Part shown: positions 1-16,962 of the stretch, piece by piece
How positions within the stretch are numbered: the first letter of the stretch is position 1
Layout of the letters: each line of letters opens with the position of its first letter
Assembly (NCBI GenBank): GCA_965644295.1
Contig: CBFFRP010000387.1
Span: forward strand, 1 to 16,962
From: Paraphysomonas bandaiensis
Taxonomy: Eukaryota; Protista; Chrysophyceae
Direction of reading: 5' to 3'
DNA length: 16,962 bases
Notes under the pieces: generated by a model
Seen by the model: the letters and a program-made list of their open reading frames with translations, nothing else
Told to the model about the DNA's origin: nothing
Database searches by the model: none
Program-made: the position numbers and the translations under genes

Positions 1-554
1 ACTGGTAGTAGGTAGTAGGTAGGGGTTGTCCAGGAGGGAGGCCTCGGTAGCCTACTGGGTGATGTCAAGAAGCTCACGGAAGAATACATTACAGCATCCT
101 CTGGGTCATTAGGGTCAAGCAAGGGATGAGTACTGGGGCTCTCCTGACTGGTAGTAGGTAGTAGGTAGGGGTTGTCCAGGAGGGAGGCCTCGGTAGCCTA
201 CTGGGTGATGTCAAGAAGCTCACGGAAGAATACATTACAGCATCCTCTGGGTCATTAGGGTCAAGCAAGGGATGAGTACTGGGGCTCTCCTGACTGGTAG
301 TAGGTAGTAGGTAGGGGTTGTCCAGGAGGGAGGCCTCGGTAGCCTACTGGGTGATGTCAAGAAGCTCACGGAAGAATACATTACAGCATCCTCTGGGTCA
401 TTAGGGTCAAGCAAGGGATGAGTACCGGGGCTCTCCTGACTGGTAGTAGGTAGTAGGTAGGGGTTGTCCAGGAGGGAGGCCTCGGTAGCCTACTGGGTGA
501 TGTCAAGAAGCTCACGGAAGAATACATTACAGCATCCTCTGGGTCATTAGGGTC
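1..554. repeat. 146-bp tandem repeat (satellite), about 3.8 copies visible, probably continuing left of the window
   Basis: Units begin ACTGGTAGTAGGTAGTAGG at 1, 147, 293 and 439. Copies look identical except T>C at 426. The fourth copy is cut at 554 by the Copia LTR. Confidence 0.97.
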
Positions 555-847
555 TAACAGAAGTTGACATTATTTGCTAAGGTTTACTATTCTCAACTGA
601 TAAGATGAAATTATAAACATTACATGATAAAGAACCTAAGTTGTGTTCGATGTGTTCAACACCATTCATTTACTACTATAGTGTACAAACCACACACTCA
701 GTGATCGTATCCTGTATAGTCATCCACTTCTACTTCAGTTTCATACTACATAATATAATGTACTAATTACATATATATCTTTCGATCCTTGCATCTCACA
801 TAATACTGCACTCAATTGCAAGTATATAGAATCTTCAGATCTCAACA
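555..847 (-). repeat. 3' LTR (293 bp)
   Basis: No difference found by eye versus 5554-5846. The minus strand reads TGTTGAG...CTGTTA. Confidence 0.97.
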
Positions 848-972: not shown

Positions 973-2784
973 CTACTTGCGTCTTCTTTTATCCCTTGGT
1001 CCCTCATTAATCACTTCAGTGGAACTCTTAACTTTCTCTCCGAGATTTCTCTTTCTCTGCTCCATATATGATAAACCAACCAATGACTTTGTATAAATAT
1101 CTGCTGCTTGTTGCGATGTATGCACATGCACTAACTTAATCGTATTGAACTGATTGGGATCCACGTGCTCTCTCACCATGTGATACTTAATCTCAATGTG
1201 CTTCGACTTCTTGTGAAACACTGGGTTTTCGGCCAAATCCTGGGCACTCTGACTGTCGATGAAGAATGGTGTGGGTTTGATGAGCCTCAACTTAATCTCA
1301 CCCGTCACCCCCCGAACCCATAGCACTTCTTGGAGACCCGAGTAAATACACTGATACTCAGACTGCATGCTTGACGTTGCCACTGTCGTCTGCAGTTTGG
1401 ACTGCCAGACTATAGGCCCTCCCGCTGCAAACCCAACGTACCCCGACGTGGACTTCCTGGAGAGCTGATCTCCCGCCCAATCCGCGTCAGTAAACATATG
1501 GAAGTCGAACCGTCTACTCCCATATTGAATCCCTTTGTCAATAGAACCACGAATATATTGCCATACATGTGTTAATAGCTTGCATACTTCAATATTCACC
1601 TTATTACTGAACCGAGACAGTACTCCCACTGCATAGGCTATATCCGGCCTCGTGTTCATCGATAGATATAGTAATGCACCTATCAGCGGCCGATATGGGA
1701 AGTTATCTACTATAAGCTGTTCCTCCTCGGTATGCTCATGCCGCGCCCCTTTTGCCACTAGATCCATTGCTTCCGCCGGTAGAGGACTCTTCCGTACCTT
1801 TCGCGGTGACCCAAGATACTTTTCAAACTTTTCTAAGATCTTAGCCGCATATACTGATTGGTCAAGACGAATATACTCTGGCGTTCTTGTGACTCGAACA
1901 TTCAGAAAATGTTCCATCTCGCCCATATCCTTCATATCAAACCGGGCACACAGTTGAGCTTTAATATCCTTCACTATGTTGACATCACGACCTAACACTA
2001 GGATATCATCCACATATATCGTTAATAATATCAATTCATCGCCCTTATACTGATAATACAAACACGGGTCTAATACACATGGTTTAAAATGCATAGATCG
2101 TATGAATTTATCCAATGTTTTCCACCACGACCGCGGGGAACTCCGAAGCCCGTATAACGACTTCTTCAGCTTAAAGCAGTACCCCTCAGGCAGCTGAAAG
2201 TCCGGAGTTGCCTTCATATATACGTCCCCCTCTATATCTGCATATAGAAATGCGTTAGACACATCCAGTTGATGAATTACCATGTTCATCACGAAAGCTA
2301 TGGCGATTAACAGTCGCACTGTTACCCCCTTAACAACGGGTGCGAAATGGTTCGCCCAACCACTCGACTGCTGTCCACAACCGATTGCTACAAGACGAGC
2401 CTTATATCGGCGGACCTCTCCCTCCTTATCGTACTTCTTTCCATAGACGTACTTGGAGTGCAGTGGGACGACTCCGTCCGGTATACGAGTCACCTCCATG
2501 GTATCTCGCTTCGCCAAACCCTCTCGCTCTACACGGCGAGCTCGTCTCCACTCCCTGTGCTCGGCACTCTCCAAGGACTCACGATGTGTCTGAGGCACTG
2601 TCGACTCTTCCGCTGACATCCACACTGAGTCTGCCTCCTGTAAAAGGTCACTCACATCACTCTCATCACTCAAATGATGGATTTGTCCTAACACCGACAC
2701 ATTCGTTACCGTCCTTGGAGTTCTTGCGCGTTTGCCGTGCGGATGATTCTCGGCAGGGGTCCCTTCCCCGAAGGTAATGCTGAG
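973..2784 (-). CDS. pol: Copia polyprotein part 3: linker, reverse transcriptase (RVT_2 type) and RNase H
   Basis: RYKARLVA, HQLDVSNAFL, LKKSLYGLRSSPRSW, IYVDD, TRPDIAYAV, FTDADWAG, KSKHIEIKYH, AADIYTK. The frame is open upstream of the listed GTG (2700) to a TGA at 2787-2785 and includes basic linker GKRARTPR. Confidence 0.95.
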   Translation of the reverse strand, partial: LSITFGEGTPAENHPHGKRARTPRTVTNVSVLGQIHHLSDESDVSDLLQEADSVWMSAEESTVPQTHRESLESAEHREWRRARRVEREGLAKRDTMEVTRIPDGVVPLHSKYVYGKKYDKEGEVRRYKARLVAIGCGQQSSGWANHFAPVVKGVTVRLLIAIAFVMNMVIHQLDVSNAFLYADIEGDVYMKATPDFQLPEGYCFKLKKSLYGLRSSPRSWWKTLDKFIRSMHFKPCVLDPCLYYQYKGDELILLTIYVDDILVLGRDVNIVKDIKAQLCARFDMKDMGEMEHFLNVRVTRTPEYIRLDQSVYAAKILEKFEKYLGSPRKVRKSPLPAEAMDLVAKGARHEHTEEEQLIVDNFPYRPLIGALLYLSMNTRPDIAYAVGVLSRFSNKVNIEVCKLLTHVWQYIRGSIDKGIQYGSRRFDFHMFTDADWAGDQLSRKSTSGYVGFAAGGPIVWQSKLQTTVATSSMQSEYQCIYSGLQEVLWVRGVTGEIKLRLIKPTPFFIDSQSAQDLAENPVFHKKSKHIEIKYHMVREHVDPNQFNTIKLVHVHTSQQAADIYTKSLVGLSYMEQRKRNLGEKVKSSTEVINEGPRDKRRRK

Positions 2785-3365
2785 TCAGCCTGGGGCTGCA
2801 CCTGCCCACTTTCCGACTGCTGTGGCACCACTCCGCTGATACCGCCGTCACGGTTGTCAGTAACTCTGGCCCTAACCACCCTCTGCGCAAGATCCTCTGT
2901 CATCTTCTTGATGTCAGCAATATGAATAGGAGTTTTATCCTCCACTTGAACCTGGTTACCAGTAACCAACGACCGGTATCCCACAATAAGTCCCTTCCTT
3001 ATCACCACTCTGTTAGTCTTGTATAGCAGACCACCATCCTCATGGTGCTTTCCGATAAGATACTCAAACTCACCCGGTTGACGAGCCTCGGGATCTATAG
3101 CCACTTGAGCCTCCTCCAGCTCTCTATAATAATCCTGAGACCTCTCAGGTACCGATTCATCAAATAATACATGTACAGAGTGTACTACGGTGTCCCCCAC
3201 TAGCACCTTGTATCCTTTTCGATCAGCTGGATACCCTATGAAATAACCTGTCATTGCTTTGTCCTCCCAGTCCTTCCTCCTGTCGGCCTTGGGTGTTAGC
3301 ACATATGCTTTGCACCCCCATTTCCGTAGCCACGATAGGCTGGGAACGCTCCCCCTGGGACACAC
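2706..3365 (-). CDS. pol: Copia polyprotein part 2: integrase C-terminal SH3-like (GKGY) region plus an extra domain; frameshifted continuation rather than a separate gene
   Basis: PSLSWLRKWGCKAYV, GYFIGY...KGYKV and VHVLFDE are the motifs that normally follow SPYE in Copia integrases. The ORF caller's start is GTG, immediately after an in-frame TGA (3368-3366). Confidence 0.9.
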   Translation of the reverse strand: MCPRGSVPSLSWLRKWGCKAYVLTPKADRRKDWEDKAMTGYFIGYPADRKGYKVLVGDTVVHSVHVLFDESVPERSQDYYRELEEAQVAIDPEARQPGEFEYLIGKHHEDGGLLYKTNRVVIRKGLIVGYRSLVTGNQVQVEDKTPIHIADIKKMTEDLAQRVVRARVTDNRDGGISGVVPQQSESGQVQPQADSALPSGKGPLPRIIRTANAQELQGR

Positions 3366-5569
3366 TCATATGGAGACATCCATCCTTGCCACGTCCGAGT
3401 TGGCATTCGTCGCACAATGTAACATGCAGTTTGATAAGCATCAAACCAGAACGACTTTGGAAGTCCAGATGCCGTCAACATCGTCAGTGTCATCTCCCCA
3501 ATTGTTCGGAATTTCCTCTCAGACACCGCGTTGAGCTCTGGCGTGTCTCGTGTTGTATGTGACACCCGAGTCCCATATCGCTGCAACAGATACTCTCTTA
3601 TCTGCTGACTAATAAGTTCGGATCCTCCATCGGCATGATACTCCACTATACGGTTCCACCCCTCGTACTTCACTAAGTGGACCTCGCACAAGTGTCGTAG
3701 ACATTTGAACACCTCCTCTCCGCTTCGAGTCCTCAATCCATATTCCCATATCATCTTTGTTGCTAAGTCCGTAAATAGGAGCACGTACTTATACCCTTGT
3801 CTGGATTCACAATTGAGATAGACGGAGATGTCCGCTGTTACTCTTTCCAGGAACCTGACTGCGCTTAGCTCTTCGTTGTCCCGTGATTTGAACGAATGCC
3901 TGGTTATCTTCGCCTTGGCACACCATTTACACAGGGGTTTCTTGCAACTCTTCTCCTTTGCCTTCGAAAGGTGATGTCGTTGTAGTCCTGATCCTCTGAA
4001 TAACATGTGTCGGTGAGCTTCTATTAACTTCGATTTCGAGACATGTCCAGTACGCTCATGTAAGCGATCCAACGCATCTTGTCCTGTATTATCCGACAAA
4101 TTTACCTCCTCCATCTGATTGCACATAGACACATTTGGCAGATTTAACACCTCCATCAAGTCCACATACGGCATTCCTCCATGCTCATCGTACTCTCCAG
4201 TCAACACCTCGTTTCCAGAGTCCAATTCCACGATTTTAGGCTTTCGAAGCAGTTGTAATCCGTATCCCATTGATCTCAGCATCCCTCCTGACACAATGTT
4301 CTTCACCGCTTCTTCACTAACTCTGATGTCTCTCCATTCCCCGAATGTACCAGTTCCCTGTGTCTCCAATTGAGAACCCTTTCTAGTTAGTTGGATTGCC
4401 CCAAACTCAGGAGTAAATGACTCCAGTGCAATTTTATCCTTTACTATAAACAGTCTTTTACTTGCACAACTGTCCAGATATACACGAGGTTCTTCCGACG
4501 TATCCACCGATAGCAAAACCTCTTCTCCAAACATATTCGCTTCATCATCCGACGACTCTCCGTCGTTGACGTATTTCTTCCATTCTGTCTCGAATTTCCT
4601 GTTCGATTTTCGAGGATTCTCATTATCCGGGTTTTTTATGTTCTTCCGTTTTTTCGACTTGCACTGTCGGGCTTTGTGACTAAAATCTCCACAGATATGA
4701 CAACCAGTATAATCCTTTGATCCTGGCTGCTGCACACTCTTCGAAGCCTTTTCCTTTGTCTTCCCTTTTCTTTTGAACTTGTCCATTTTTCTTTGTCGTT
4801 CCTTAGCATAACAATTCGCTGCTACATGTCCCTTCTTCCGACAAAATGAACAAACCACTGGCTCCTTCGACGCCGTAAAATTGATCTCTTCAGATTTGTC
4901 TCCCTTTAGTTTCTTCAGCTGCGTCATAGCCTCGTCATACTCTTCACAAGCCTCTTTCACCGAATCAAATGTAGTTGTTGCTTTAGGCATCATCGCTACC
5001 GACATCCATAAATCATGTAATTCCTCTATCTGCAGCGCTGCTTTTATCTTTGCTAATTTACTTGCCTCTGTCTGCGGTTGTCCCAATTTTATGAGCTTCT
5101 GGATTATACCGTTCAGTCGATCTACCCCAACAGACACCTTTTCCCCCGGCCTTATTTTGAACGAATGGTATTCTGCCGTAGTCTTCTCCAATACAGTCCC
5201 AATCTCGCCTCTGAACCTATCAACCAGTGTCTGAAGGAGCTCACTGGATAACACCTCCTTAGCAGGATCATCAGCAGGTAAAATTGCCTTCCCCTCCAAA
5301 TATTGATTGGCTACCTCCAACACATCAGGGTCATGCTCGCAAGCCTCCCAAATAGTACTAACACAGGTATCATTACGCTCTCTCCATGACTCTAAATTCC
5401 TTCCTCCGGCTGGCGGGTCCTCCAAGCCAAGATGGTTTCGGTTTTTCTTCATTAGATGCATCTTGATTTTTCTCGCTGAATAGTCTGCTTGGTTCTTGTC
5501 AAACCGTAGCTTCTTGTCATCTTCCCCATCCCTACAACTAGCATTCGCTACCATAACAGAAGTTGACAT
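3296..5569 (-). CDS. gag-pol: Copia polyprotein part 1: Gag (two CCHC knuckles), aspartic protease, integrase HHCC and DDE core; real frame likely ends near 3355
   Basis: CSFCRKKGHVAANC and CHICGDFSHKARQC; YLDSCAS protease motif; HERTGH...CKWC; VTADIS / HADGG / NAVSERK catalytic triad; SGLPKSFW and SPYE. Confidence 0.95.
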   Translation of the reverse strand: MSTSVMVANASCRDGEDDKKLRFDKNQADYSARKIKMHLMKKNRNHLGLEDPPAGGRNLESWRERNDTCVSTIWEACEHDPDVLEVANQYLEGKAILPADDPAKEVLSSELLQTLVDRFRGEIGTVLEKTTAEYHSFKIRPGEKVSVGVDRLNGIIQKLIKLGQPQTEASKLAKIKAALQIEELHDLWMSVAMMPKATTTFDSVKEACEEYDEAMTQLKKLKGDKSEEINFTASKEPVVCSFCRKKGHVAANCYAKERQRKMDKFKRKGKTKEKASKSVQQPGSKDYTGCHICGDFSHKARQCKSKKRKNIKNPDNENPRKSNRKFETEWKKYVNDGESSDDEANMFGEEVLLSVDTSEEPRVYLDSCASKRLFIVKDKIALESFTPEFGAIQLTRKGSQLETQGTGTFGEWRDIRVSEEAVKNIVSGGMLRSMGYGLQLLRKPKIVELDSGNEVLTGEYDEHGGMPYVDLMEVLNLPNVSMCNQMEEVNLSDNTGQDALDRLHERTGHVSKSKLIEAHRHMLFRGSGLQRHHLSKAKEKSCKKPLCKWCAKAKITRHSFKSRDNEELSAVRFLERVTADISVYLNCESRQGYKYVLLFTDLATKMIWEYGLRTRSGEEVFKCLRHLCEVHLVKYEGWNRIVEYHADGGSELISQQIREYLLQRYGTRVSHTTRDTPELNAVSERKFRTIGEMTLTMLTASGLPKSFWFDAYQTACYIVRRMPTRTWQGWMSPYECVPGGAFPAYRGYGNGGAKHMC
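5541..5553 (-). promoter_or_regulatory. Primer binding site, probably for initiator tRNA-Met
   Basis: TGGTAGCGAATGC directly after the 5' LTR. TGGTAGC is complementary to the GCUACCA 3' end of many eukaryotic initiator tRNAs. The full length of pairing cannot be verified without the host tRNA. Confidence 0.8.
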
Positions 5570-5884: not shown

Positions 5885-6542
5885 ACGCTTTGTGGCATCC
5901 TTTAACGAGTGGACGGCGTACTTATATTTCTCTTTGGGGACCCTCTGTTGATATGTATATACAGTGTAGTACATGTGAGTACAAGGACCTTTTCTTCATT
6001 AATGTGTGGGTTATATTGTCCTTTTGTATTCAGTATACATACATGCAACTGTATTTCTGCATTTTGTGTGCTTGTGGTATAAGGCAATATCAAGCCACAA
6101 GTTGATAGTAAACGATAGTGTTTTTAAGTTGTTTTATCAGAGGTTATCTGTGATAATAATGACTTGTATCACTAACTATATCACAGACTATACCTACACC
6201 AATCTACTGTACATCTTGGACTGTGCATACACTACGTCGTATTGTCATCATATATCGTATACTAGTATACTCTAGTATGCAGCTGTCATACTGTAGCTTG
6301 CTGTCCACACCACACTGCATATAGCCGTATACCGTATACTATATCACACCAAGCTTTCACTCCAATGACAGACAATCTCCTATACGGGGATGACAACAAG
6401 ATATAAATCTTATTTGAGATAACATAAATTGGTGATATGATTATAATTTATAATCTCAGTATAATAGAGGGAAAGTCTTGTCCAGTGATGTCAATTTCTA
6501 ACACAACATACCTAGAAAAAAAATCGAAAAGAACATCACTAA

Positions 6543-9116
6543 CTAAGATGTAAACGAATTAAATGTTTGCTTAGTGTTGATTTCTATATCAGATGTCAAT
6601 AATAGATGGTCAGAGGGCCAGGTGGAATTGGGAAAGGGACCATCCTGCGGAGAATACAAAAACTCAGTTTGCCAATCCTTCGAGTCACAAGACGAGGACT
6701 GAGAAAAGGTTTCTCGAAGAGTTCCTGGCAGTCGCCCTAAATATTTACATAATACACAGGGCAACAATATCTACATCATTTTATTGCACTACACTGGATA
6801 CTACACAGCATGGGAATATTAAATGTGAATTTACCTTTTTCTATCCCTAATGATGATGGTAAAACACTTGCTGAGAGCACATGGCATTCCTCCGAGACGA
6901 ACACATAGTCCAAAGTCCTGAAGAAACGCGATTAATATATACAAGAATGATACCAACAAGTATCACGTAGTATGTACGTTGTAGCTTTACGAATATGTTG
7001 CTGAGCATAACGAACAAGGTTGAATACACTACAAGGATTCGTACCCCGAAAACTCTGAGGTCCAGTTAGTATAGGATGGGTCCTCACGATGCAGGTCTTT
7101 ATACACGCTCCTAAGAGCTGGAATTCGATCTTCTTTTCCTCCACATCGAACACAGGATTCGTCTTTATTCACATGACTCCGACAAGTCTCTTCATTCTCA
7201 CCTCCAAACTGTGAGGTAGTAGGAGCTTTTTTTAGCAGTGCCTCATCTCTAAGTCTGAACATTTCTTGCAGAGAGGGGGCGGAAACAACTCTCTCCCCAA
7301 GAATATCCTCAATTCCATCTGCACTCGGACTCGTATCAGTATCTTCCTCTGTTACCCAAAGGTGCGGACACCGGGCGTACAACAAATCGAAGAGCTCGTG
7401 GGCTAAAACCATAGCCCGCGCAGGAGAGCTTCGTTCATTTTCACTCCACCAATATGGCTGCGTAAAACAAATCATACAAGTCAATTAATTTCATCCATTT
7501 AACATATGACGTTACGACAAACTATTGCATGTACACTGTTTAACATACATCTGAAACATTGTACCTAGTGCGCATAATCATATTTATATGTGCTATTGGA
7601 GGTATGTACACATCATGTACAATGGAATACAATACACACTTATGTCTAATAACCTGCAAAAATTTGCACTCCAAGAACAAAAACTTATCATGTCATAGTA
7701 AAGTGTTGTGTACATCGTAGCACGGGCGTTCAGTGTGTATTAATCGCGCACAAAAAGAATATAAGGCAATGATTAAATCCTCAACTACCTGATAACACTC
7801 CTTGCACATAAAAATCTCTCGATCCTTAGGCACCCAAGGCATGCTTGTCCTTCCGTTCTCTCTAGCTTTCTCCACATATTCTGCACCCTGACAACTAACA
7901 ATACCTCCTCCGCACTTACCGCACACCGTCAAAAACCTGTCTTTCAGTAAAGGAAGCCTGTATCTGTTGTATATATCCACCAGCGCTTGTTTAGGATCTT
8001 TAGGATCAACAAGTACACTTTCTGGGCAAGCTGAACGCAGTCTCATACCCTTGCTTGTCGTCAACAATACCCGGTCCTCAATGCGGGCTCGCTGAAATAC
8101 TTCCTGGTACTCAGGATGTGCATTCTTCGGAGGTAGTCCTTCTAGACCATATATTATACATATACAATAGTGTAGGGGTTTCTTAGAAATAGAAGTGTGT
8201 GTGCGACATATTAACTTGTGTCCCAGGGTATAGTGTACTAAGATTCGTAGTGCTATTTTTTAGCGATGGGCTGTAGCATCGTATTAGATGAACAATACAC
8301 AACTAAAACTACGAGCGAGCAGTGTTGGGTACCTGTAGTTTTCAGATTCTGACTCTTGGAAGGGCAGTGCATCGCAGCATCAAGACCAAGCACTCTTAAC
8401 CACCGACAGAGCCTCGAAAGGCTACTATCACATAGAAATTTCACCTGACCGCCCGCCATGCGCCGGTGCATGGAGACATAGGTCTCAGGGGTTGAGTGCG
8501 CAGAAGAATAAGCACATGGACACCAACTGGATGTCAGCAACTTGTACGGCTCACTAGTAGGAGTGGAATTAAAATCACCAGCCAAAACTATTGGTATGTT
8601 AGTATTTCTCATCAATGACTCTCGAAATTTACGGATTCTATCCAGCAGATAGCGAGATTGAGCTTCTTTAACATCTTCGAATGCAGGATTCCAATACAAA
8701 TGAGCAGTAGACACGATGATATCACAGGACGACTCCTTATGTCGAAGACATGCAATAATACCAACATTATGACGTCGATAATTGTGATAAATGCTCTTAT
8801 CAGTATCCGCATATGGCTCTGCAAGATCATCAAAGTAAATATCTTCATATGATATAAGATCAAATCTATCAGCTGCATAAGCCACCAAACATCCATCTTG
8901 TTTATATGGTCTTTTTATATAGATACAATTATGTCCCATTATTGATAATAAGGGACAAAATGTGTCTTGATAATGATCGACTTCTTGTAGGCAAATCACA
9001 TCGTACGAATGCAATACACGGATGATAGAGGTGATAAGATCCTTACGATGAGTCCAGTTAGTTGAACTATAACAATTGGCAAGAGTATTCCAACAAGCTA
9101 ATTTAATATGTATCAT
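6543..9116 (-). CDS. CCR4/Angel/nocturnin-like EEP nuclease with an internal Mut7-C domain; exons 9116-8333, 8141-7789, 7457-7045, 6917-6835, 6736-6543 (about 608 aa)
   Basis: All four introns are GT-AG and phase-compatible (1827 nt = 609 codons). EEP motifs: WNTLA, DVICLQEVD, AHLYWNP, GDFNS, YTNW..F.GTLDYVF (spanning a splice junction), PSDH. Mut7-C motifs: KFLCDSSLSRLCRWLRVLGLD, ARIEDRVLLTT, CGKCGG, CKECYQ/PYWW. Confidence 0.88.
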
Positions 9117-9290
9117 ATTTGTGATGGTTAGTATATGGGGGGGTTAATGTATGGAGATGTGTGTAGGATATGGAGCTACATGGAGGGCTGGATGCACGTG
9201 TATATGGACATGTATGTAGAGGGGCCAGCTATACCATATACACATATACATATATATACAGCAGTAAGTATATATACAGAGGACACAGTA

Positions 9291-9453
9291 CAGGGGGTGG
9301 TTGTGCATATCGATTTCATCGTTTATTTCATCGTTTATTTCATTGAAAAGTCATCGATTTTTCAGTGAAAAGTGAAAAAAAGTGACTTTTTAATGAAAAA
9401 TCGACGACTTTTCAATGAAATAAACGATGAACAATATGCACAACCACCCCCAG
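9291..9453. mobile_element. 163-bp palindromic MITE-like element, possibly Tc1/mariner type with TA TSD
   Basis: Left arm CAGGGGGTGGTTGTGCATAT...TTTCATTGAAAAGTCATCGATTTTTCA. The right arm is its near-perfect reverse complement, ending ATATGCACAACCACCCCCAG. TA lies on both sides (9289-9290, 9454-9455). No coding capacity. Confidence 0.7.
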
Positions 9454-9904: not shown

Positions 9905-12839
9905 ATGGGCAAGTTCAAATACAAGGTAAGTGCCTATAGCCTCTAAACGCATGCAATTGACTGGTTGCAGATCACTCAGCATCACGGATACCACAGTGCC
10001 AATCAAGTCTTTATTCCTGGTAATTTTGCAATAGCTATGGTAAATTAATTACTACATGCAACTAAACATATCATTTATATCATTTTTTATTAGTCATATT
10101 TCTCTGTGGGGTTTACGACTTCATTCATGGCCACGCCTCTCAATATCTACCTTGTATCTACTCTCAATGCTGAGCCACCCATGCAAACTACAATATCTAT
10201 TTTACAAACTCTTCCTTGGTCATTAAAGTTGATATTCGGATTTATTAGTGATGTATTGCCAATCAATGGGATGCACAGGAAGCCTTATTTATCGATAGGC
10301 GCACTGGTGTATTCCTTTGCGTTGATGGGGTACGCTATACTGGGTATCAATGATGTAGTAGTACTGGCGATTACTCTGTTTGTGGCCACTATGGGAATGA
10401 TTATGATGGACGTCATGGCGGATACTATGGTAAGTATATTTTGCACTCACATGACTAGTATTCGAGATCGATGTCATGCGTTAATATAAATGATCGCTTT
10501 GCTAATGTATGTAGTGTGTTGAGAGGTCTAGGTTCGAGCCAGAGGATATACAAGGACAAATGCAATCAAGTTATTACTCTATTAGATTTGCAGGTACCGA
10601 ATTTTATGAAATTTTGTGATGGCTTTGTATATATATACATATATATTTCGAATTCGTGCTGCAAATTAGTTCGGTGGGTGTGACAATATGTGAGCCATAA
10701 TTGAAAACTACTTCAAGTGACTATTTATTCCTTTTAAGATATTAACATATCGATAATCGTACGAATTCTATTGTGAATAATGTATTTTAGGCGCGTTGAT
10801 TGGTTCAGTTATGGGGGCCCTCGTTAGCAACCGAGATATATGGGGATGGGGCCTCACGTTCAACCAGGTAGCTTTAATAACAGGCTGCGTTCCATTCGTG
10901 CTGGTTTGCCCATTTCTATTCAGGTAATCCCAGTGTATATTCTGCACTTTTTTAGTTATAATATGTAAATTTCCTGGACTTCGTTTTTACAACAGCCTCC
11001 GGGAAAAATACCGAAGAGTGCCACTGTCATTGGCCGAAGGGGCGTCTAGTGATATGGTGGAACTGCCTGCGGACGAAAGAGTCCTGATTTACGACAGTAC
11101 TGCTACTGCCATGTCTGTTGTGGAGATGTCAAAGACGACTTCCGCTCCCAATCTCATGTACCCCTACTCTTACCAACGTACGTGACGTGTTCTGCAATTT
11201 TTATCAGTGTATACTTTTCATGACGCGACTTAGAACTATTGTTCATCTATCGGAAGTATTCAGTATATATATCGCTCTGTGATGAGTGGAAAGCCACAGT
11301 TTAGATGTCATGATGTTGCAGAGATGTCTGGGACTGATGATGCCGAGGCTGCTGTGCTGATTCAGAGGTGTAAAAGTGACCTGAGTACTCCTGTATCCAA
11401 CTTCTTTGAGGATATTGATGAAGAGGATACCTCTGCGTTGTCACCTTTGTCGAGACAATGCCAGGAGATATGGCAGACTGTTCAGCTCAAGTCTGTATGG
11501 AGACCAATGGTAGAATCACCTTATCTTTCACTTATTCTAAAATCGACCTATTATATTAACTGCACACTATACGTAGGCATTTGTCTACTGTTTCAACATG
11601 CTTCAAATACCGAATGTTGCTTGGCAGTCATATTTGCAGCTCACTCTACATTTTGAGCCGTGGGTTCTGGTGAGTACTACATAAACTGACGAAATATAAT
11701 GTTGCACACGAAGTGTTATAGTTCGATATGTATGATTTTATTGTGTAATATACTACTATTGTACGTTAGGAACACTAGTTCAGTGAGAGCGTGAAGTAGA
11801 TTGTATGACTTATTACGATATATGTAGGGTGCTATGGTAGTGGCAGGAAGCTTTATGACATTTGCCGGCGTAGTGGCATACAAGTACTTTTTCTTCAAGG
11901 TACACGTTGTATGTATTGTATTATGGGGGCATATATTGCATTGTGTTGGTCTGCGTCTTTCTGAATTGCAAATTCCTACTTAGCTGATATAGTATTGCAG
12001 ACGTCTTGGAGAAAGATATATCTGTGGTCTGTGGTCTTGACAACTTTTTTTTCACTGCTTCAATTGGTACTTATATTCCAAGTAAGTGCGTCATATGTAG
12101 TCTAAATGGGACTGCTTTTCATACTCATATGGGTGTATATCTTACATGTGTTGTTGAATCAGCTTAATACCAAGTATCTCCATATAAGCAACTATTTTTT
12201 CTCTTTGGGTGATGATGTCATTACGGCCTATATTAATGGGATACAATTTTTGCCGGTATGTATTCCGATGCGTTTCCTCATGAAGTGTAAAGATGAGATT
12301 TAACATCAACATATGCGTAATTGGTTTGGTTTCTTATTGTGATTTCTCTCCCAGCTATGCATCATGTATATGAAGCTGTGTCCCGATGGAGCGGAGGGGG
12401 CGAGCTACTCTATGCTTACAACATTTGGAAACATCGCCCTCGTTTGTGCCTCCAACCTCGGAAATATAGTGGCAGGGTTTTGGTATGTTCAATGTATACT
12501 GATATATATATGTGGCGTTGGTATTGCGTATTGACATTTGTTATTCTTTGTATGGTGCATCTCTCTTGACTATATACCAGGGATGTGTCGAATGACGCTA
12601 TGAGAGAGGGAAATACAGATGGCTTATGGAAATTACACGTCTTCACTTCTGTCATAGCTCTGTTGCCACTCTCTTTACTGTTCCTTCTCCCCCGTAACGA
12701 AGCAGAACAGGAAGAACTGCGGAAAAACGCCACCCGGTCTCGGAAGGGGGGTGCTGTGTTTCTGACTGTGCTTATCGGCAGTATTGTATGGAGTGTGGGA
12801 GCTGCCGGAGTGAAGCTGTATGAGAACTGGAGCTTTTGA
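9905..12839 (+). CDS. BT1-family folate-biopterin transporter (MFS); exons 9905-9925, 9971-10039, 10094-10429, 10515-10593, 10791-10923, 10996-11177, 11322-11509, 11577-11669, 11828-11899, 12001-12081, 12163-12255, 12355-12482, 12581-12839 (about 577 aa)
   Basis: LPWSLKLIFGFISDVLPINGMHRKPY, DVMADTM/CVER, GQMQS, LCPDGAEGASYSMLTTFGN and multiple hydrophobic helices. Twelve GT-AG introns give a continuous frame (1734 nt). The first exon and the exon 6/7 junction are the least certain. Confidence 0.9.
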
Positions 12840-14830: not shown

Positions 14831-16651
14831 TCATTTATGTATTGGACAGACCTTCACAAAACGCTTGAAAAAGTTCATAACTGACCAATTCTTTCGCGTA
14901 TTCCCTTTAACATGATGCACCGCAATTTCATCGTCGTCATTGGGAAAGTGGCCCGCCAAAATATTCTCAATATGGCTCAGATCCAGTGGCTGACGGATGA
15001 TATGGGTGAACCCAATATCCTTCAAATCAGCTACTTCGTCAAAAAAATCTTCCGCGTGGCTATAAGGTGGAAGCATTCCTATGAAGAGGGTACTATCAAA
15101 AGTCTTTGCTAGCTCAAGCAAGTTGTATGTAGAGTTTTCTCTCTTTGTATTTTTTCCATGTGACTCATCCACTATGCGCATCATATTACTCATCATTTCC
15201 CCACCGTGCATAACAGGCATTTGCAAGTCGACAAATACTACGTCATACAAACACCGAGAGTTTCCAGAAATCGATGTCTTCTCCTCACTTATAGAATCTA
15301 TGAGTTTTCCGAGCCCCAATTGGCCATTAGTAGCACTCGTTACAGTGCAGTTTCTCCCCTCTAAGAATTCCGAAAGTGTTTCAATCACAGTCGTGCTGTC
15401 ATCAACAATGAGTACCTTGAGAGGGGTGATTCTATTGACTGGAAAATGCCTTGCGTGGGAACAATGTGGTGTTCCGGTATCCTGGAGTTCGAGTTGGGTA
15501 CAGGGAAGCCAAAAATCAAAACTAGCACATTTCAGTACATCATTTAGCTCCAGCGCCATGCCGCCTCCAATAGAGCGGAGAACCCTCCACTGATCACCCA
15601 CTACAGTATCTGAATTATTTTCTAAGTATTCAGCAGGAGAAGATAAGAGTTCCATCACTTCACCGAATATTGCCTTAAAAGTAGGTACTCTCAGAGCCCC
15701 CTCAGCACACACGATACGCACTAGCATTAATTGTCGTGAACTACTCCAGTGCAACTTCACTGTCACAACACTTCTCGGCATACCACTATCTATTGCCTCC
15801 AACATCTGACATATTTTCCCTAATGCATTAACGAGAAGTAAATCTGGGTAGGTTACACACATAGTACTCCCTCGTCCAGATGCGTCTTCGTACTCAAAAG
15901 ATACACCCAATAGTGTAACAATGTTACGCAGCTTCTGTACAAGTTCATGCACACCACGAGCTACAGAACTATAAAGACCACAAGGATCACTAGATACCTC
16001 CGACTGGAAGAGTAGATCTTTGGTCAGCATTAAGCAGCTCTCTACCACGTTTTGCAAAAATGACAACGTCGTGGAGACACCAGACAATTCATATTTAATG
16101 CCGCTTTTAGTTGCTTCGCTGATACCTGATGGTGCCGTCATTACCTCAGCAAGGAAATTCTCATAGGCGAGGGACAAATTGGCAACAGGTGTCTTCAAAT
16201 TATGTGTCAAACGAAGCAGGCTCAGACTGCGCTGATTCTCACGCATGTCGTCATTGAAATTCGATTGAGTCACCTCTTGGGCCCGATCGCGACGAAGGGA
16301 TATTAAAGTTGACACAAAACTACTGAGATCCTGCAGATCTTGTTTCTGGGCCAGGGTAAACTCCGACCATGGTTTGGTGTCTATAATACAAATCGACCCT
16401 ATTTTAACACCACCAACCAGCAGTGCAGCCCCCGCATAGAACCTTACATAAGGTGGACCAGTTACTAGCACATTGTTTTTAAAAGTCTCATCCTCATGCG
16501 AATCCAATACTACGAATACATCTGAACTTTGAGGAAGACACACATATGTACAGAAGGCATGATTACGATGAGTCTCAGAGGCTGATAATCCATCATGAGA
16601 TTTAAACCATTGTCGTTCAAGGTCGACTAGAGATACCAAGCATATAGGGAC
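14831..16651 (-). CDS. Hybrid histidine kinase-like protein (GAF - HisKA - degenerate HATPase - receiver); last exon only, 5' exon(s) outside the window
   Basis: Acceptor ctaat...tag then VPICLVSLVDLERQWFKS. GAF motifs AFC and GPPYVRFYAGA.L...KIGSICIIDTKP; H-box-like THNLKTP; receiver LKVLIVDDS...DVVFVDLQMPVMHG. The listed start at 16639 is an internal TTG. Confidence 0.88.
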   Translation of the reverse strand, partial: VPICLVSLVDLERQWFKSHDGLSASETHRNHAFCTYVCLPQSSDVFVVLDSHEDETFKNNVLVTGPPYVRFYAGAALLVGGVKIGSICIIDTKPWSEFTLAQKQDLQDLSSFVSTLISLRRDRAQEVTQSNFNDDMRENQRSLSLLRLTHNLKTPVANLSLAYENFLAEVMTAPSGISEATKSGIKYELSGVSTTLSFLQNVVESCLMLTKDLLFQSEVSSDPCGLYSSVARGVHELVQKLRNIVTLLGVSFEYEDASGRGSTMCVTYPDLLLVNALGKICQMLEAIDSGMPRSVVTVKLHWSSSRQLMLVRIVCAEGALRVPTFKAIFGEVMELLSSPAEYLENNSDTVVGDQWRVLRSIGGGMALELNDVLKCASFDFWLPCTQLELQDTGTPHCSHARHFPVNRITPLKVLIVDDSTTVIETLSEFLEGRNCTVTSATNGQLGLGKLIDSISEEKTSISGNSRCLYDVVFVDLQMPVMHGGEMMSNMMRIVDESHGKNTKRENSTYNLLELAKTFDSTLFIGMLPPYSHAEDFFDEVADLKDIGFTHIIRQPLDLSHIENILAGHFPNDDDEIAVHHVKGNTRKNWSVMNFFKRFVKVCPIHK

Positions 16652-16800: not shown

Positions 16801-16962
16801 ATATATAACATAACATGCATATCATCCATATATAACATAACATGCATATCATCCATATATAACATAACATGCATATCATCCATATATAACATAACATGCA
16901 TATCATCCATATATAACATAACATGCATATCTCCCATATATAACATAACATGCATATCATCC
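16801..16962. repeat. 27-bp minisatellite, 6 copies to the window edge, probably intronic
   Basis: Unit ATATATAACATAACATGCATATCATCC at 16801, 16828, 16855, 16882, 16909 (variant ending TCTCCC) and 16936. Degenerate related sequence at about 16700-16800. Confidence 0.96.

What the first reader, a model, noticed from the sequence alone, without database searches (positions are those of the whole stretch)
6543..9116. Mut7-C domain nested inside a CCR4/Angel-type EEP nuclease
Seen: after splicing, the order is EEP N-half (WN, QE, HLYWNP, GDFNS), then a complete Mut7-C domain (FLCD..L..LCRWLRVLGLD, RVLLTT, CxxC...CxxC-Q-P-YW zinc ribbon, about 8445-7445), then the EEP C-half (YTN, GTLDYVF, PSDH). 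This is an insertion into the catalytic domain, not an end-to-end fusion, and all recognisable EEP catalytic residues are retained. Established: eukaryotic Mut7-C normally partners a DEDD exonuclease in MUT-7/Nibbler/EXD3 small-RNA trimming enzymes, while CCR4/Angel/nocturnin/PDE12 EEP domains act as deadenylases or RNA-end and nucleotide phosphatases. Inference: this could be an alternative RNA 3'-end processing enzyme in which the MUT-7 RNA-binding module delivers substrate to a different catalytic core. I know of no functional characterisation, but cannot exclude that the architecture exists in domain databases.
Basis: partly seen in the sequence, partly recalled or inferred. Interest (0 to 1): 0.78.

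Follow-up and report, generated by a model that had tools for sequence, protein, structure and literature searches.

The report
Mut7-C domain nested in EEP nuclease
This is a real, expressed five-exon gene of a marine alga (probably a diatom or close relative) for a CCR4/nocturnin-type phosphodiesterase with an RNA-binding Mut7-C domain inserted in a loop of its catalytic domain; the family is large, visible in databases, and apparently unstudied.

Summary
The minus-strand CDS 9116..6543 has five exons with GT-AG introns and encodes 608 aa. All four junctions appear in RNA contigs from two independent studies, and one 1648-nt contig links exon 4 to exon 1.

The domain order is EEP N-half, then Mut7-C plus a linker (about 290 aa), then EEP C-half. 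Both domain junctions lie inside exons, and orthologues elsewhere are uninterrupted ORFs.

In a homologue model the two EEP halves close into one fold (CNOT6L Z 34.5). The insert alone folds as Mut7-C (best solved match C. elegans MUT-7 CTD; TM 0.67-0.82 to Atlas Mut7-C clusters). It sits in a loop that holds 0 to about 83 residues in nocturnin, PDE12, CNOT6L and ANGEL2.

All EEP catalytic motifs are kept. The Mut7-C keeps its four zinc cysteines and basic residues, but one PIN acid is Ser family-wide.

At least 119 clusters at 50% identity carry the insert (diatoms, chrysophytes). Databases name them automatically, and I found no paper on them.

Most likely this is an RNA-end phosphodiesterase with a built-in RNA-binding arm. 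The substrate is unknown. I call it a new variant of a known kind, of moderate interest.

The parts
8333..9116 (-). Exon 1 (ATG at 9116-9114). Encodes the EEP N-half (residues 1 to about 198), a short variable stretch, and the first strand and helix of Mut7-C (residues 226-261).
   Evidence: ORF and translation. Pfam Exo_endo_phos at 5e-14 plus the Mut7-C start. An in-frame TAA lies 10 codons upstream, at 9146-9144. An RNA contig covers 8333-9130.
8142..8332 (-). Intron 1 (191 nt, GT..AG, phase 1), lying inside the Mut7-C domain.
   Evidence: Joint 8141/8333 is seen in RNA contigs of runs X1, X2 and X3.
7789..8141 (-). Exon 2: the Mut7-C core (LLTTS, ACPES) and the zinc-ribbon cysteine pairs CGKC and CKEC.
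   Evidence: Pfam Mut7-C at 1.3e-8, 35.6 bits. It aligns in line with homologues.
7458..7788 (-). Intron 2 (331 nt, GT..AG, phase 0), lying inside the zinc ribbon between CYQ and PYWW.
   Evidence: Joint 7457/7789 is in the 1648-nt contig of X1. In homologues the two sides are adjacent residues, for example P0043 403/404.
7045..7457 (-). Exon 3: the end of Mut7-C (PYWW and the SSPARA helix, to about 7380), a poorly conserved linker with one conserved helix (SLQEMF, 7257-7274), and the start of the EEP C-half (ALRSVY, YTNW) from about 7130.
   Evidence: The C-half profile A4 matches PDE12, CNOT6L and nocturnin.
6918..7044 (-). Intron 3 (127 nt, GT..AG).
   Evidence: The joint is seen in X1, X2 and X3.
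6835..6917 (-). Exon 4: the EEP strand carrying the catalytic Asp (TLDYVF).
6737..6834 (-). Intron 4 (98 nt, GT..AG). It is spliced in X1 and X2 contigs and retained in X1 record 2 and X3 record 12.
   Evidence: If retained, the reading frame stops at 6776-6778, before the SDH motif (ORF 6776..6913).
6543..6736 (-). Exon 5: the last EEP strands with WPSDH (catalytic Asp and His) and the stop TAG at 6545-6543. The 3' UTR reaches at least 6440.
   Evidence: RNA contigs cover 6440-6738.
7380..8441 (-). Mut7-C domain coding span (residues 226 to about 405, interrupted by introns 1 and 2).
   Evidence: Pfam. The insert profile finds 8q66_A, the MUT-7 CTD. The insert model has pLDDT 95.6, with structural matches.
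7131..7379 (-). Linker between Mut7-C and the EEP C-half (about 83 aa). It is acidic, variable and of low confidence in the homologue model, except for one conserved helix.
   Evidence: Alignment A1. The equivalent segments of the P0043 model have low pLDDT.

Best explanation
The gene encodes a 608-aa, single-chain, two-domain enzyme.

Shown here:
- The catalytic core is a complete Mg-dependent-type EEP phosphodiesterase of the CCR4 / nocturnin / PDE12 / Angel clade.
- Its sequence is interrupted by about 290 residues after the helix that follows the GDFNS strand. The first roughly 180 of these are a minimal Mut7-C domain (a reduced PIN-like fold plus a four-cysteine zinc ribbon). The rest is a linker.
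- The two EEP halves refold into one domain in a homologue model.
- The protein has no LRR or any other N-terminal domain.
- The gene is spliced as predicted and is found in poly(A) RNA libraries.

Inferred:
- The EEP site is the active centre and cleaves a phosphoester at an RNA end. Candidates are 3' tail removal, or removal of a 2',3'-cyclic or 2' phosphate.
- The Mut7-C insert is not a second nuclease. It acts as a built-in single-stranded-RNA-binding arm, as shown for MUT-7 and EXD3 (PMC11347159).
- The arm would let the enzyme find RNA on its own, without docking to CCR4-NOT through an LRR.

The exact substrate cannot be told from sequence.
For: Gene model and expression:
- The CDS and all four junctions were confirmed.
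- One RNA contig runs from exon 4 to exon 1.
- Both domain junctions lie inside exons.
- Orthologues are single uninterrupted ORFs in other genomes.

EEP core:
- Pfam hit of 53 bits.
- The N-half matches nocturnin at 4e-18, ANGEL2 at 1e-15, Ccr4 at 1.6e-14 and PDE12 at 1.6e-13.
- The C-half profile matches PDE12 at 4e-14, CNOT6L at 6e-11 and nocturnin at 3e-9.
- The catalytic N, E, H, D/N, D and D/H motifs are present in the window and are invariant or at least 90% conserved in the family.
- The homologue model has pLDDT 79.5 and pTM 0.73. It aligns to CNOT6L over model residues 1..631 with Z 34.5 and 285 aligned residues.

Insert:
- Pfam Mut7-C hit in the window, and 1e-12 to 1e-25 in all 12 Mut7-C-bearing homologues scanned.
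- The only whole-domain PDB match is the MUT-7 CTD, 8q66.
- TM 0.67-0.82 to Mut7-C clusters in the Atlas.

Evidence against a catalytic role for the insert:
- The bacterial LLTRD Asp is Ser in at least 90% of the family and in the window. C. elegans MUT-7 also has Ser there.
- Conserved Arg and Lys residues and four invariant Cys are kept.
- MUT7-C binds RNA and speeds up the attached exonuclease (PMC11347159).

Other points:
- No LRR was found.
- This is the only Mut7-C locus in the 62.6-Mb genome.
Against: - No biochemical data exist for any member, so the substrate is open. Solved relatives act on poly(A), 2',5'-oligoadenylate, 2',3'-cyclic phosphate RNA ends or NADP(H).
- The N-half is closest in sequence to nocturnin, whose best-supported substrate is NADP(H), not RNA.
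- The first two PIN acids (FLCD, LG.D) are still conserved, so residual or altered nuclease activity of the insert is not excluded.
- The position of the insert relative to the EEP cleft could not be inspected, because the tools return no coordinates or PAE.
- The structure was predicted for a homologue about 35-46% identical to the window's exon pieces, not for the window protein itself.
Confidence: 0.6

Rival explanations
1. It is a dual nuclease. The Mut7-C insert is an active PIN-like endoribonuclease that works with the EEP exonuclease or phosphatase: it cuts, and the EEP site then trims or heals the end.
For: The first two PIN acids are kept: the FLCD Asp in at least 90% of members, and the LG.D Asp in most members and in the window. 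Archaeal Mut7-C has been described as an active RNase domain (PMC4075521).
Against: The Asp of the bacterial LLTRD motif is Ser throughout the family. The PIN classification paper calls Mut7-C the most reduced PIN-like form, with activity depending on the species (PMC5499597). The only studied eukaryotic Mut7-C domains bind RNA, and no cleavage was reported for them (PMC11347159).
Confidence: 0.12
2. The EEP core acts on a non-RNA substrate, for example as a nocturnin-like NADP(H) 2'-phosphatase. The Mut7-C insert then serves in regulation, localisation or partner binding rather than substrate delivery.
For: The N-half is most similar to nocturnin. In C. elegans the Mut7-C domain also mediates protein binding and localisation (PMC11347159).
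Against: The protein-binding surface of MUT-7 is a nematode-specific insertion between the cysteine pairs. That spacing is about 115 residues in 8q66 but only 27-35 here. The C-half is closer to PDE12 and CNOT6L than to nocturnin. Basic residues of the insert are conserved.
Confidence: 0.15
3. It is a DNA-end or DNA-repair enzyme of the EEP superfamily (TDP2- or APE-like), with Mut7-C as a nucleic-acid clamp.
For: TDP2, LINE-1 endonuclease and ExoIII share the same fold, and the model matches them at Z 21-25.
Against: The model matches the CCR4 / PDE12 / nocturnin / ANGEL2 group clearly better (Z 31-34.5, against 25 or less for the DNA enzymes). Sequence searches find only that clade plus bacterial EEP proteins.
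Confidence: 0.05
4. It is a gene-model artefact: two neighbouring genes, or a transposed Mut7-C gene sitting in an intron of an EEP gene, wrongly read as one protein.
For: None was found. Contigs cannot exclude rare isoforms that skip exons.
Against: Exon 1 alone encodes the EEP N-half plus the Mut7-C start. Exon 3 alone encodes the Mut7-C end plus the start of the EEP C-half. One RNA contig joins exons 4, 3, 2 and 1. Intronless orthologues encode the whole architecture in one ORF. 119 of the 150 nearest clusters carry the insert.
Confidence: 0.01

Closest known systems
CNOT6L / CNOT6 / yeast Ccr4 (the EEP deadenylase subunit of CCR4-NOT)
   Same: They share the EEP fold (Z 34.5, 285 residues aligned) and all catalytic motifs. 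Both halves match by sequence.
   Different: This protein has no LRR domain for CAF1 docking; it starts at the first EEP strand. The loop after the GDFNS helix holds about 37 residues in CNOT6L and about 290 here, including a whole Mut7-C domain.
Nocturnin (NADP(H) 2'-phosphatase)
   Same: It is the best sequence match for the N-half (4e-18), with Z 33.3.
   Different: In nocturnin the N-half and C-half alignments abut (chain residues 222 and 220), so there is no insert at this loop. The substrate specificity of the window protein is unknown.
PDE12 and ANGEL2
   Same: Both belong to the same clade. PDE12 is the best match for the C-half (4e-14). ANGEL2 matches the N-half at 1e-15. Z is 33.5 for PDE12 and 31.8 for ANGEL2.
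   Different: They carry about 20 (PDE12) and about 83 (ANGEL2) residues at the same loop, with no Mut7-C. PDE12 has its own N-terminal domain.
MUT-7 / EXD3 (DEDDy 3'-5' exoribonuclease plus a C-terminal Mut7-C)
   Same: They carry a Mut7-C domain with a zinc ribbon. The solved MUT-7 CTD (8q66) is the only whole-domain PDB match of the insert. Ser replaces the bacterial Asp at the same position in the one MUT-7 sequence aligned here, C. elegans 8q66. In both cases a Mut7-C is paired with a nuclease that acts on 3' ends.
   Different: The catalytic partner here is EEP, not DEDD. The domain is nested, not appended. It is the minimal form, without the large insertion between the cysteine pairs. 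There is no evidence here of a role in small-RNA pathways.
Plant CCR4 homolog 6; Babesia 'angel-like protein 2'; Plasmodium 'DNase I-like protein'
   Same: These are the nearest named relatives of the EEP core. They also carry large insertions (128-486 aa) at the same loop.
   Different: Their insertions show no Mut7-C by Pfam at E up to 1, by the family insert HMM, or by hhalign. They form a separate clade on the core tree.
Bacterial Ubl-Mut7-C and stand-alone archaeal or bacterial Mut7-C proteins
   Same: They have the same minimal domain. The insert profile finds them at E 1e-9 to 1e-14, with TM 0.67-0.76.
   Different: They keep the LLTRD Asp. They are separate small proteins or fused to a ubiquitin-like or THUMP domain, not nested in an enzyme.

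Membership tests
EEP superfamily (Pfam PF03372 Exo_endo_phos) | A profile match above the curated cut-off. | tested here: met
   Exon 1 scores 53 bits against a cut-off of 24.5. The C-half profile matches the C-terminal third of solved EEP enzymes at 4e-14 to 3e-9.
EEP superfamily (Pfam PF03372 Exo_endo_phos) | A complete catalytic set: Asn (WN), Glu (QE), His (HLYWNP), Asp/Asn (GDFNS), Asp (LDY) and Asp-His (SDH). | tested here: met
   All are present in the window. All are invariant or at least 90% conserved in the family.
EEP superfamily (Pfam PF03372 Exo_endo_phos) | The two sequence halves form one four-layer alpha/beta sandwich. | tested here: met
   This was tested on the homologue P0043, not on the window protein. 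VIA-align spans model residues 1..631 against CNOT6L residues 187..541 with Z 34.5.
Ccr4 / CNOT6-type subunit of CCR4-NOT | An N-terminal leucine-rich repeat domain that docks on CAF1. | tested here: not met
   The protein begins at the first EEP strand. An in-frame stop lies 10 codons upstream. Pfam finds no LRR. Homologues begin at the same place.
Mut7-C (Pfam PF01927) | A profile match above the curated cut-off. | tested here: met
   Exon 2 scores 35.6 bits against a cut-off of 23.3. Exon 1 adds profile positions 2-32. Homologues score 48-88 bits.
Mut7-C (Pfam PF01927) | A C-terminal zinc ribbon with four cysteines. | tested here: met
   CGKC lies at 7912-7923 and CKEC at 7795-7806. The four Cys are invariant in alignments A2 and A3.
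Mut7-C (Pfam PF01927) | The full set of PIN-like acidic residues, as needed for an active RNase. | tested here: not met
   The FLCD and LG.D Asp residues are kept. The Asp of the bacterial LLTRD motif is Ser in the window and in at least 90% of the family.
MUT-7 / EXD3 / Nibbler exoribonucleases | A DEDDy 3'-5' exonuclease domain (PF01612). | tested here: not met
   No exon of the window gene and none of the 12 Mut7-C-bearing homologues scanned shows this domain. Only PF03372 and PF01927 are found.
Nocturnin, ANGEL or PDE12 functional classes | Substrate specificity: NADP(H) 2'-phosphate, 2',3'-cyclic phosphate, or 2',5'-oligoadenylate and mitochondrial poly(A). | not testable with these tools
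   The sequence is about equally distant from all of these. On the core tree the family does not sit with the named plant and apicomplexan clade. No solved enzymes were in the tree.

The most novel reading that the evidence does not exclude
In ochrophyte algae (diatoms, chrysophytes and relatives), Mut7-C has been grafted into an active-site-proximal loop of a CCR4-type EEP enzyme. This would create a self-sufficient RNA 3'-end trimming or deadenylating enzyme that works without CCR4-NOT. It could be the functional counterpart of MUT-7/Nibbler in a lineage whose only Mut7-C gene is this one. If so, Mut7-C would be a portable 'RNA 3'-end handle' that evolution has paired at least twice with unrelated 3' nucleases.
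Probability: 0.25. Interest if true: 0.75.

Novelty: new variant of a known kind. Interest (0 to 1): 0.55.

Why it matters
The ancestral role of Mut7-C is still open. The only experimental work (2024) assigns it RNA binding that boosts an attached DEDD exonuclease. Here the same domain is nested in an unrelated 3'-end enzyme, in a conserved and widespread family. That is an independent natural test of the idea that Mut7-C is a general accessory for RNA-end enzymes.

It also points to a possible CCR4-NOT-independent RNA-end pathway in diatoms and other ochrophytes. These are major marine primary producers whose RNA decay and small-RNA machinery is poorly known.

The nested design is also a clear example for protein-domain evolution. 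The loop is absent in nocturnin, about 20-83 residues in its solved relatives, about 290 residues here, and 128-486 residues with other content in plants and apicomplexans.

Tried and rejected
Step left out on instruction:
- The joined 608-aa protein was never sent to a search or folding tool. Exons were searched one by one by reference. The structure was predicted for homologue P0043 (alignment A2) and for its insert (A3).
- Only in the tree script were the window's EEP-core pieces placed in one row, with X at the exon joints.

Searches that gave nothing useful:
- A single-sequence phmmer of the P0043 insert against the PDB found nothing real. Only the profile found 8q66.
- Foldseek on the 632-aa model aligned only the N-half, about 230 columns. 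VIA-align was needed to show that the fold closes.
- Word-index protein searches with A2 and A1 returned no NCBI- or UniRef-named protein carrying both domains, and did not return the window's own protein. The index scored only 8000 candidates, so this says little.
- Cluster look-ups gave organism names only for chrysophytes. Other members come from unnamed metagenome or run assemblies, so the taxonomic range beyond Ochrophyta is unresolved.
- hhalign of the family profile against plant CCR4 homolog 6 aligned only the N-half.

Readings rejected:
- A degenerate Mut7-C in the plant insert: no support from Pfam, the insert HMM or hhalign.
- Exon-skipping isoforms: none were seen in the contigs, but contigs drop rare forms.
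- Complex prediction was not used, because no protein-protein binding claim is made.
Full report
**1.
- On the minus strand, an ATG at 9116 opens a 784-nt exon. Four GT..AG introns follow, at 8332-8142, 7788-7458, 7044-6918 and 6834-6737. The frame closes at TAG 6545-6543. That gives 1827 nt and 608 residues.
- An in-frame TAA lies 10 codons upstream of the ATG. Homologues start at the same point.
- I laid public contigs on 6400-9300. All four junctions appear at the predicted bases.
- A likely culture transcriptome (run X1) has one 1648-nt contig running from exon 4 through exons 3 and 2 into exon 1, up to 9130. A second X1 contig bridges exons 5 and 4. Poly(A) marine metatranscriptomes from another study (X2, X3) show the same joints.
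- A DNA-like run (X13) holds the unspliced locus.
- No joint skips the Mut7-C exons.
- Intron 4 is retained in two contigs. That form would end at a stop (6776-6778) before the catalytic His.

**2. Domain content, tested exon by exon.**
- On instruction, the joined protein was not sent to any search or fold.
- Exon 1 matches Exo_endo_phos at 53 bits over profile positions 4-168 of 225. Its last 36 residues start Mut7-C (profile 2-32). Exon 2 matches Mut7-C at 35.6 bits, above the cut-off, over profile 29-131.
- The N-half/Mut7-C junction lies inside exon 1, and the Mut7-C/C-half junction lies inside exon 3. So the nested order does not depend on the splicing model.
- Exons 3-5 carry YTNW, TLDYVF and WPSDH. 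A profile of the family's C-halves that includes the window pieces matches the C-terminal third of PDE12 (4e-14), CNOT6L (6e-11), yeast Ccr4, CNOT6, nocturnin (3e-9) and ANGEL2.
- The N-half matches nocturnin (4e-18), ANGEL2, Ccr4, PDE12 and CNOT6/6L.

**3. It is an insertion into a loop, and the fold closes.**
- In nocturnin the N-half alignment ends at chain residue 222 and the C-half alignment starts at 220, so nothing lies between them. In PDE12 about 20 residues lie between, in CNOT6L about 37, in ANGEL2 about 83, and in the window protein about 290 (residues about 199-489).
- An AlphaFold2 model of homologue P0043 (632 aa, 40-sequence alignment) has pLDDT 79.5 and pTM 0.73. Only the variable stretches are disordered.
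- VIA-align superposes 285 residues spanning model 1..631 on CNOT6L 187..541 at Z 34.5. PDE12 scores 33.5, nocturnin 33.3 and ANGEL2 31.8. TDP2, LINE-1 endonuclease and sphingomyelinases score 25 or less.

**4. The insert is a minimal Mut7-C.**
- Folded alone, it gives pLDDT 95.6.
- The only solved structure that matches the whole domain is the C. elegans MUT-7 CTD, 8q66 (Foldseek probability 0.99; VIA Z 7.6 over 142 residues). All other PDB rows cover only the generic flavodoxin-like half.
- The insert profile finds 8q66 at E 1.6e-4.
- In the ESM Atlas it matches Mut7-C clusters of bacteria, archaea and plants at TM 0.67-0.76, and one EEP+Mut7-C cluster at 0.82.
- The cysteine pairs are 27-35 residues apart, against about 115 in MUT-7. 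This is the minimal form that PMC11347159 describes for prokaryotes and plants.
- The profile scores bacterial Ubl-Mut7-C proteins at 1e-9 to 1e-14. Aligned with them, the family keeps the FLCD and LG.D aspartates but has Ser where bacteria have the Asp of LLTRD. C. elegans MUT-7 also has Ser at that position.
- Four Cys and several Arg/Lys are invariant or nearly so.

**5. The family.**
- A full HMMER scan with exon 1 gave 3377 hits. Of the 150 best 50%-identity clusters, 119 carry the insert, and 51 of those are complete to the SDH motif.
- All 12 Mut7-C-bearing homologues put through Pfam have both domains.
- The window's five exons map in the same order, and without gaps at the exon joints, onto many of them.
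- In other genomes the whole architecture is one uninterrupted ORF.
- Named members come from chrysophytes and synurophytes (Epipyxis, Pedospumella, Mallomonas, Ochromonas). The single ESM Atlas cluster with this architecture has 120 members, most commonly Bacillariophyta.
- Automatic names exist, such as 'uncharacterized protein with PIN domain/endonuclease/exonuclease/phosphatase family' and 'CCR4-NOT transcription complex subunit 6'.
- On a tree of the EEP core with the insert removed, the 63 insert-bearing rows form one group with a single nested exception. That needs two changes, against about 26 for shuffled labels. Support for the group is only 83 SH-aLRT, and the sampling was biased by a query that included the Mut7-C start.
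- Plant CCR4 homolog 6, a Babesia 'angel-like 2' and a Plasmodium 'DNase I-like' protein form another clade. They carry 128-486 residues of unrelated sequence at the same loop.
- The window's 62.6-Mb genome has only this one Mut7-C locus.

**6. Mechanism.**
- Shown: a complete and conserved EEP catalytic set, an intact zinc ribbon, a degenerate PIN acid set, and no LRR.
- Inferred: the EEP site does the chemistry on an RNA end. The Mut7-C is a built-in ssRNA-binding arm, by analogy with MUT-7 and EXD3, where deleting the domain lowers RNA binding and slows decay (PMC11347159).
- The substrate is not predictable, because the core is about equally distant from deadenylases, PDE12, ANGEL2 and nocturnin.
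- Rivals are a dual nuclease, a small-molecule phosphatase with a regulatory insert, a DNA-end enzyme, and a gene-model artefact. The artefact reading is contradicted.

**7. Novelty.**
- The PIN-superfamily survey and the MUT-7 paper list Mut7-C with DEDD exonucleases, with ubiquitin-like domains, or standing alone. Neither mentions EEP.
- No paper in the library holds Mut7-C together with CCR4. Related searches found nothing relevant.
- The architecture is therefore visible in databases but undescribed and uncharacterised: a new variant of a known enzyme kind.
- The window gene itself is an ordinary member of that family. The organism was not identified; a marine diatom or close relative is an inference from the nearest relatives and the marine metatranscriptomes.

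Noticed in passing
window 1-554 and 16801-16962: Both ends of the contig are tandem repeats. At the start is a 146-bp unit repeated 3.8 times at 99% identity. At the end is a 27-bp unit repeated 6 times at 97%. These repeats probably explain why the assembly breaks here.
   Followed up: no
window 973-5569 (-): A Copia-type retroelement is split into three adjoining ORFs. One ORF carries the integrase core and a zinc finger (3296-5569), one the SH3_retrovirus domain (2706-3365), and one RVT_2 (973-2700). The pol frame is therefore interrupted at least twice. An earlier scan note (s1-439313) concerns 2895-3068 of this element.
   Followed up: partly
window 10106-10489 (+): An exon of a BT1 (folate-biopterin transporter) family gene lies about 1 kb from the start of the EEP gene and points the other way. 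The two genes may share a bidirectional promoter region.
   Followed up: no
window 14831-16639 (-): A 602-aa ORF carries a GAF domain and a response-regulator receiver domain. It looks like part of a hybrid sensor or phytochrome-like protein.
   Followed up: no
window 6737-6834 and 7458-7522: Intron 4 is retained in two RNA contigs (X1 record 2, X3 record 12). X3 record 12 also runs 65 nt into intron 2. Retaining intron 4 would truncate the protein before the catalytic SDH motif.
   Followed up: partly
window 8784 and 8981: The X1 RNA contig differs from the window at two bases, G>A at 8784 and C>T at 8981. The 8981 difference is also in the DNA-like run X13, so these look like strain or allele differences rather than editing.
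   Followed up: no
G000, many contigs (for example C644:8171-8899 and C661:43947-44675): The genome holds 69 Exo_endo_phos matches. Most are near-identical hits to profile positions 2-204 inside very long open frames, typical of the endonuclease of LINE-type retrotransposons.
   Followed up: no
proteins P0187-P0199, P0241, P0242: Plant 'CCR4 homolog 6', a Babesia 'angel-like 2' and a Plasmodium 'DNase I-like' protein carry 128-486 residues at the same EEP loop with no recognisable domain. This loop is a recurrent insertion site in this branch of the family.
   Followed up: partly
ESM Atlas clusters: Mut7-C also occurs fused to THUMP in Myxococcota and other bacteria, and to a DEDD exonuclease in plants. 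This adds to the picture of a domain that repeatedly joins RNA-handling modules.
   Followed up: no
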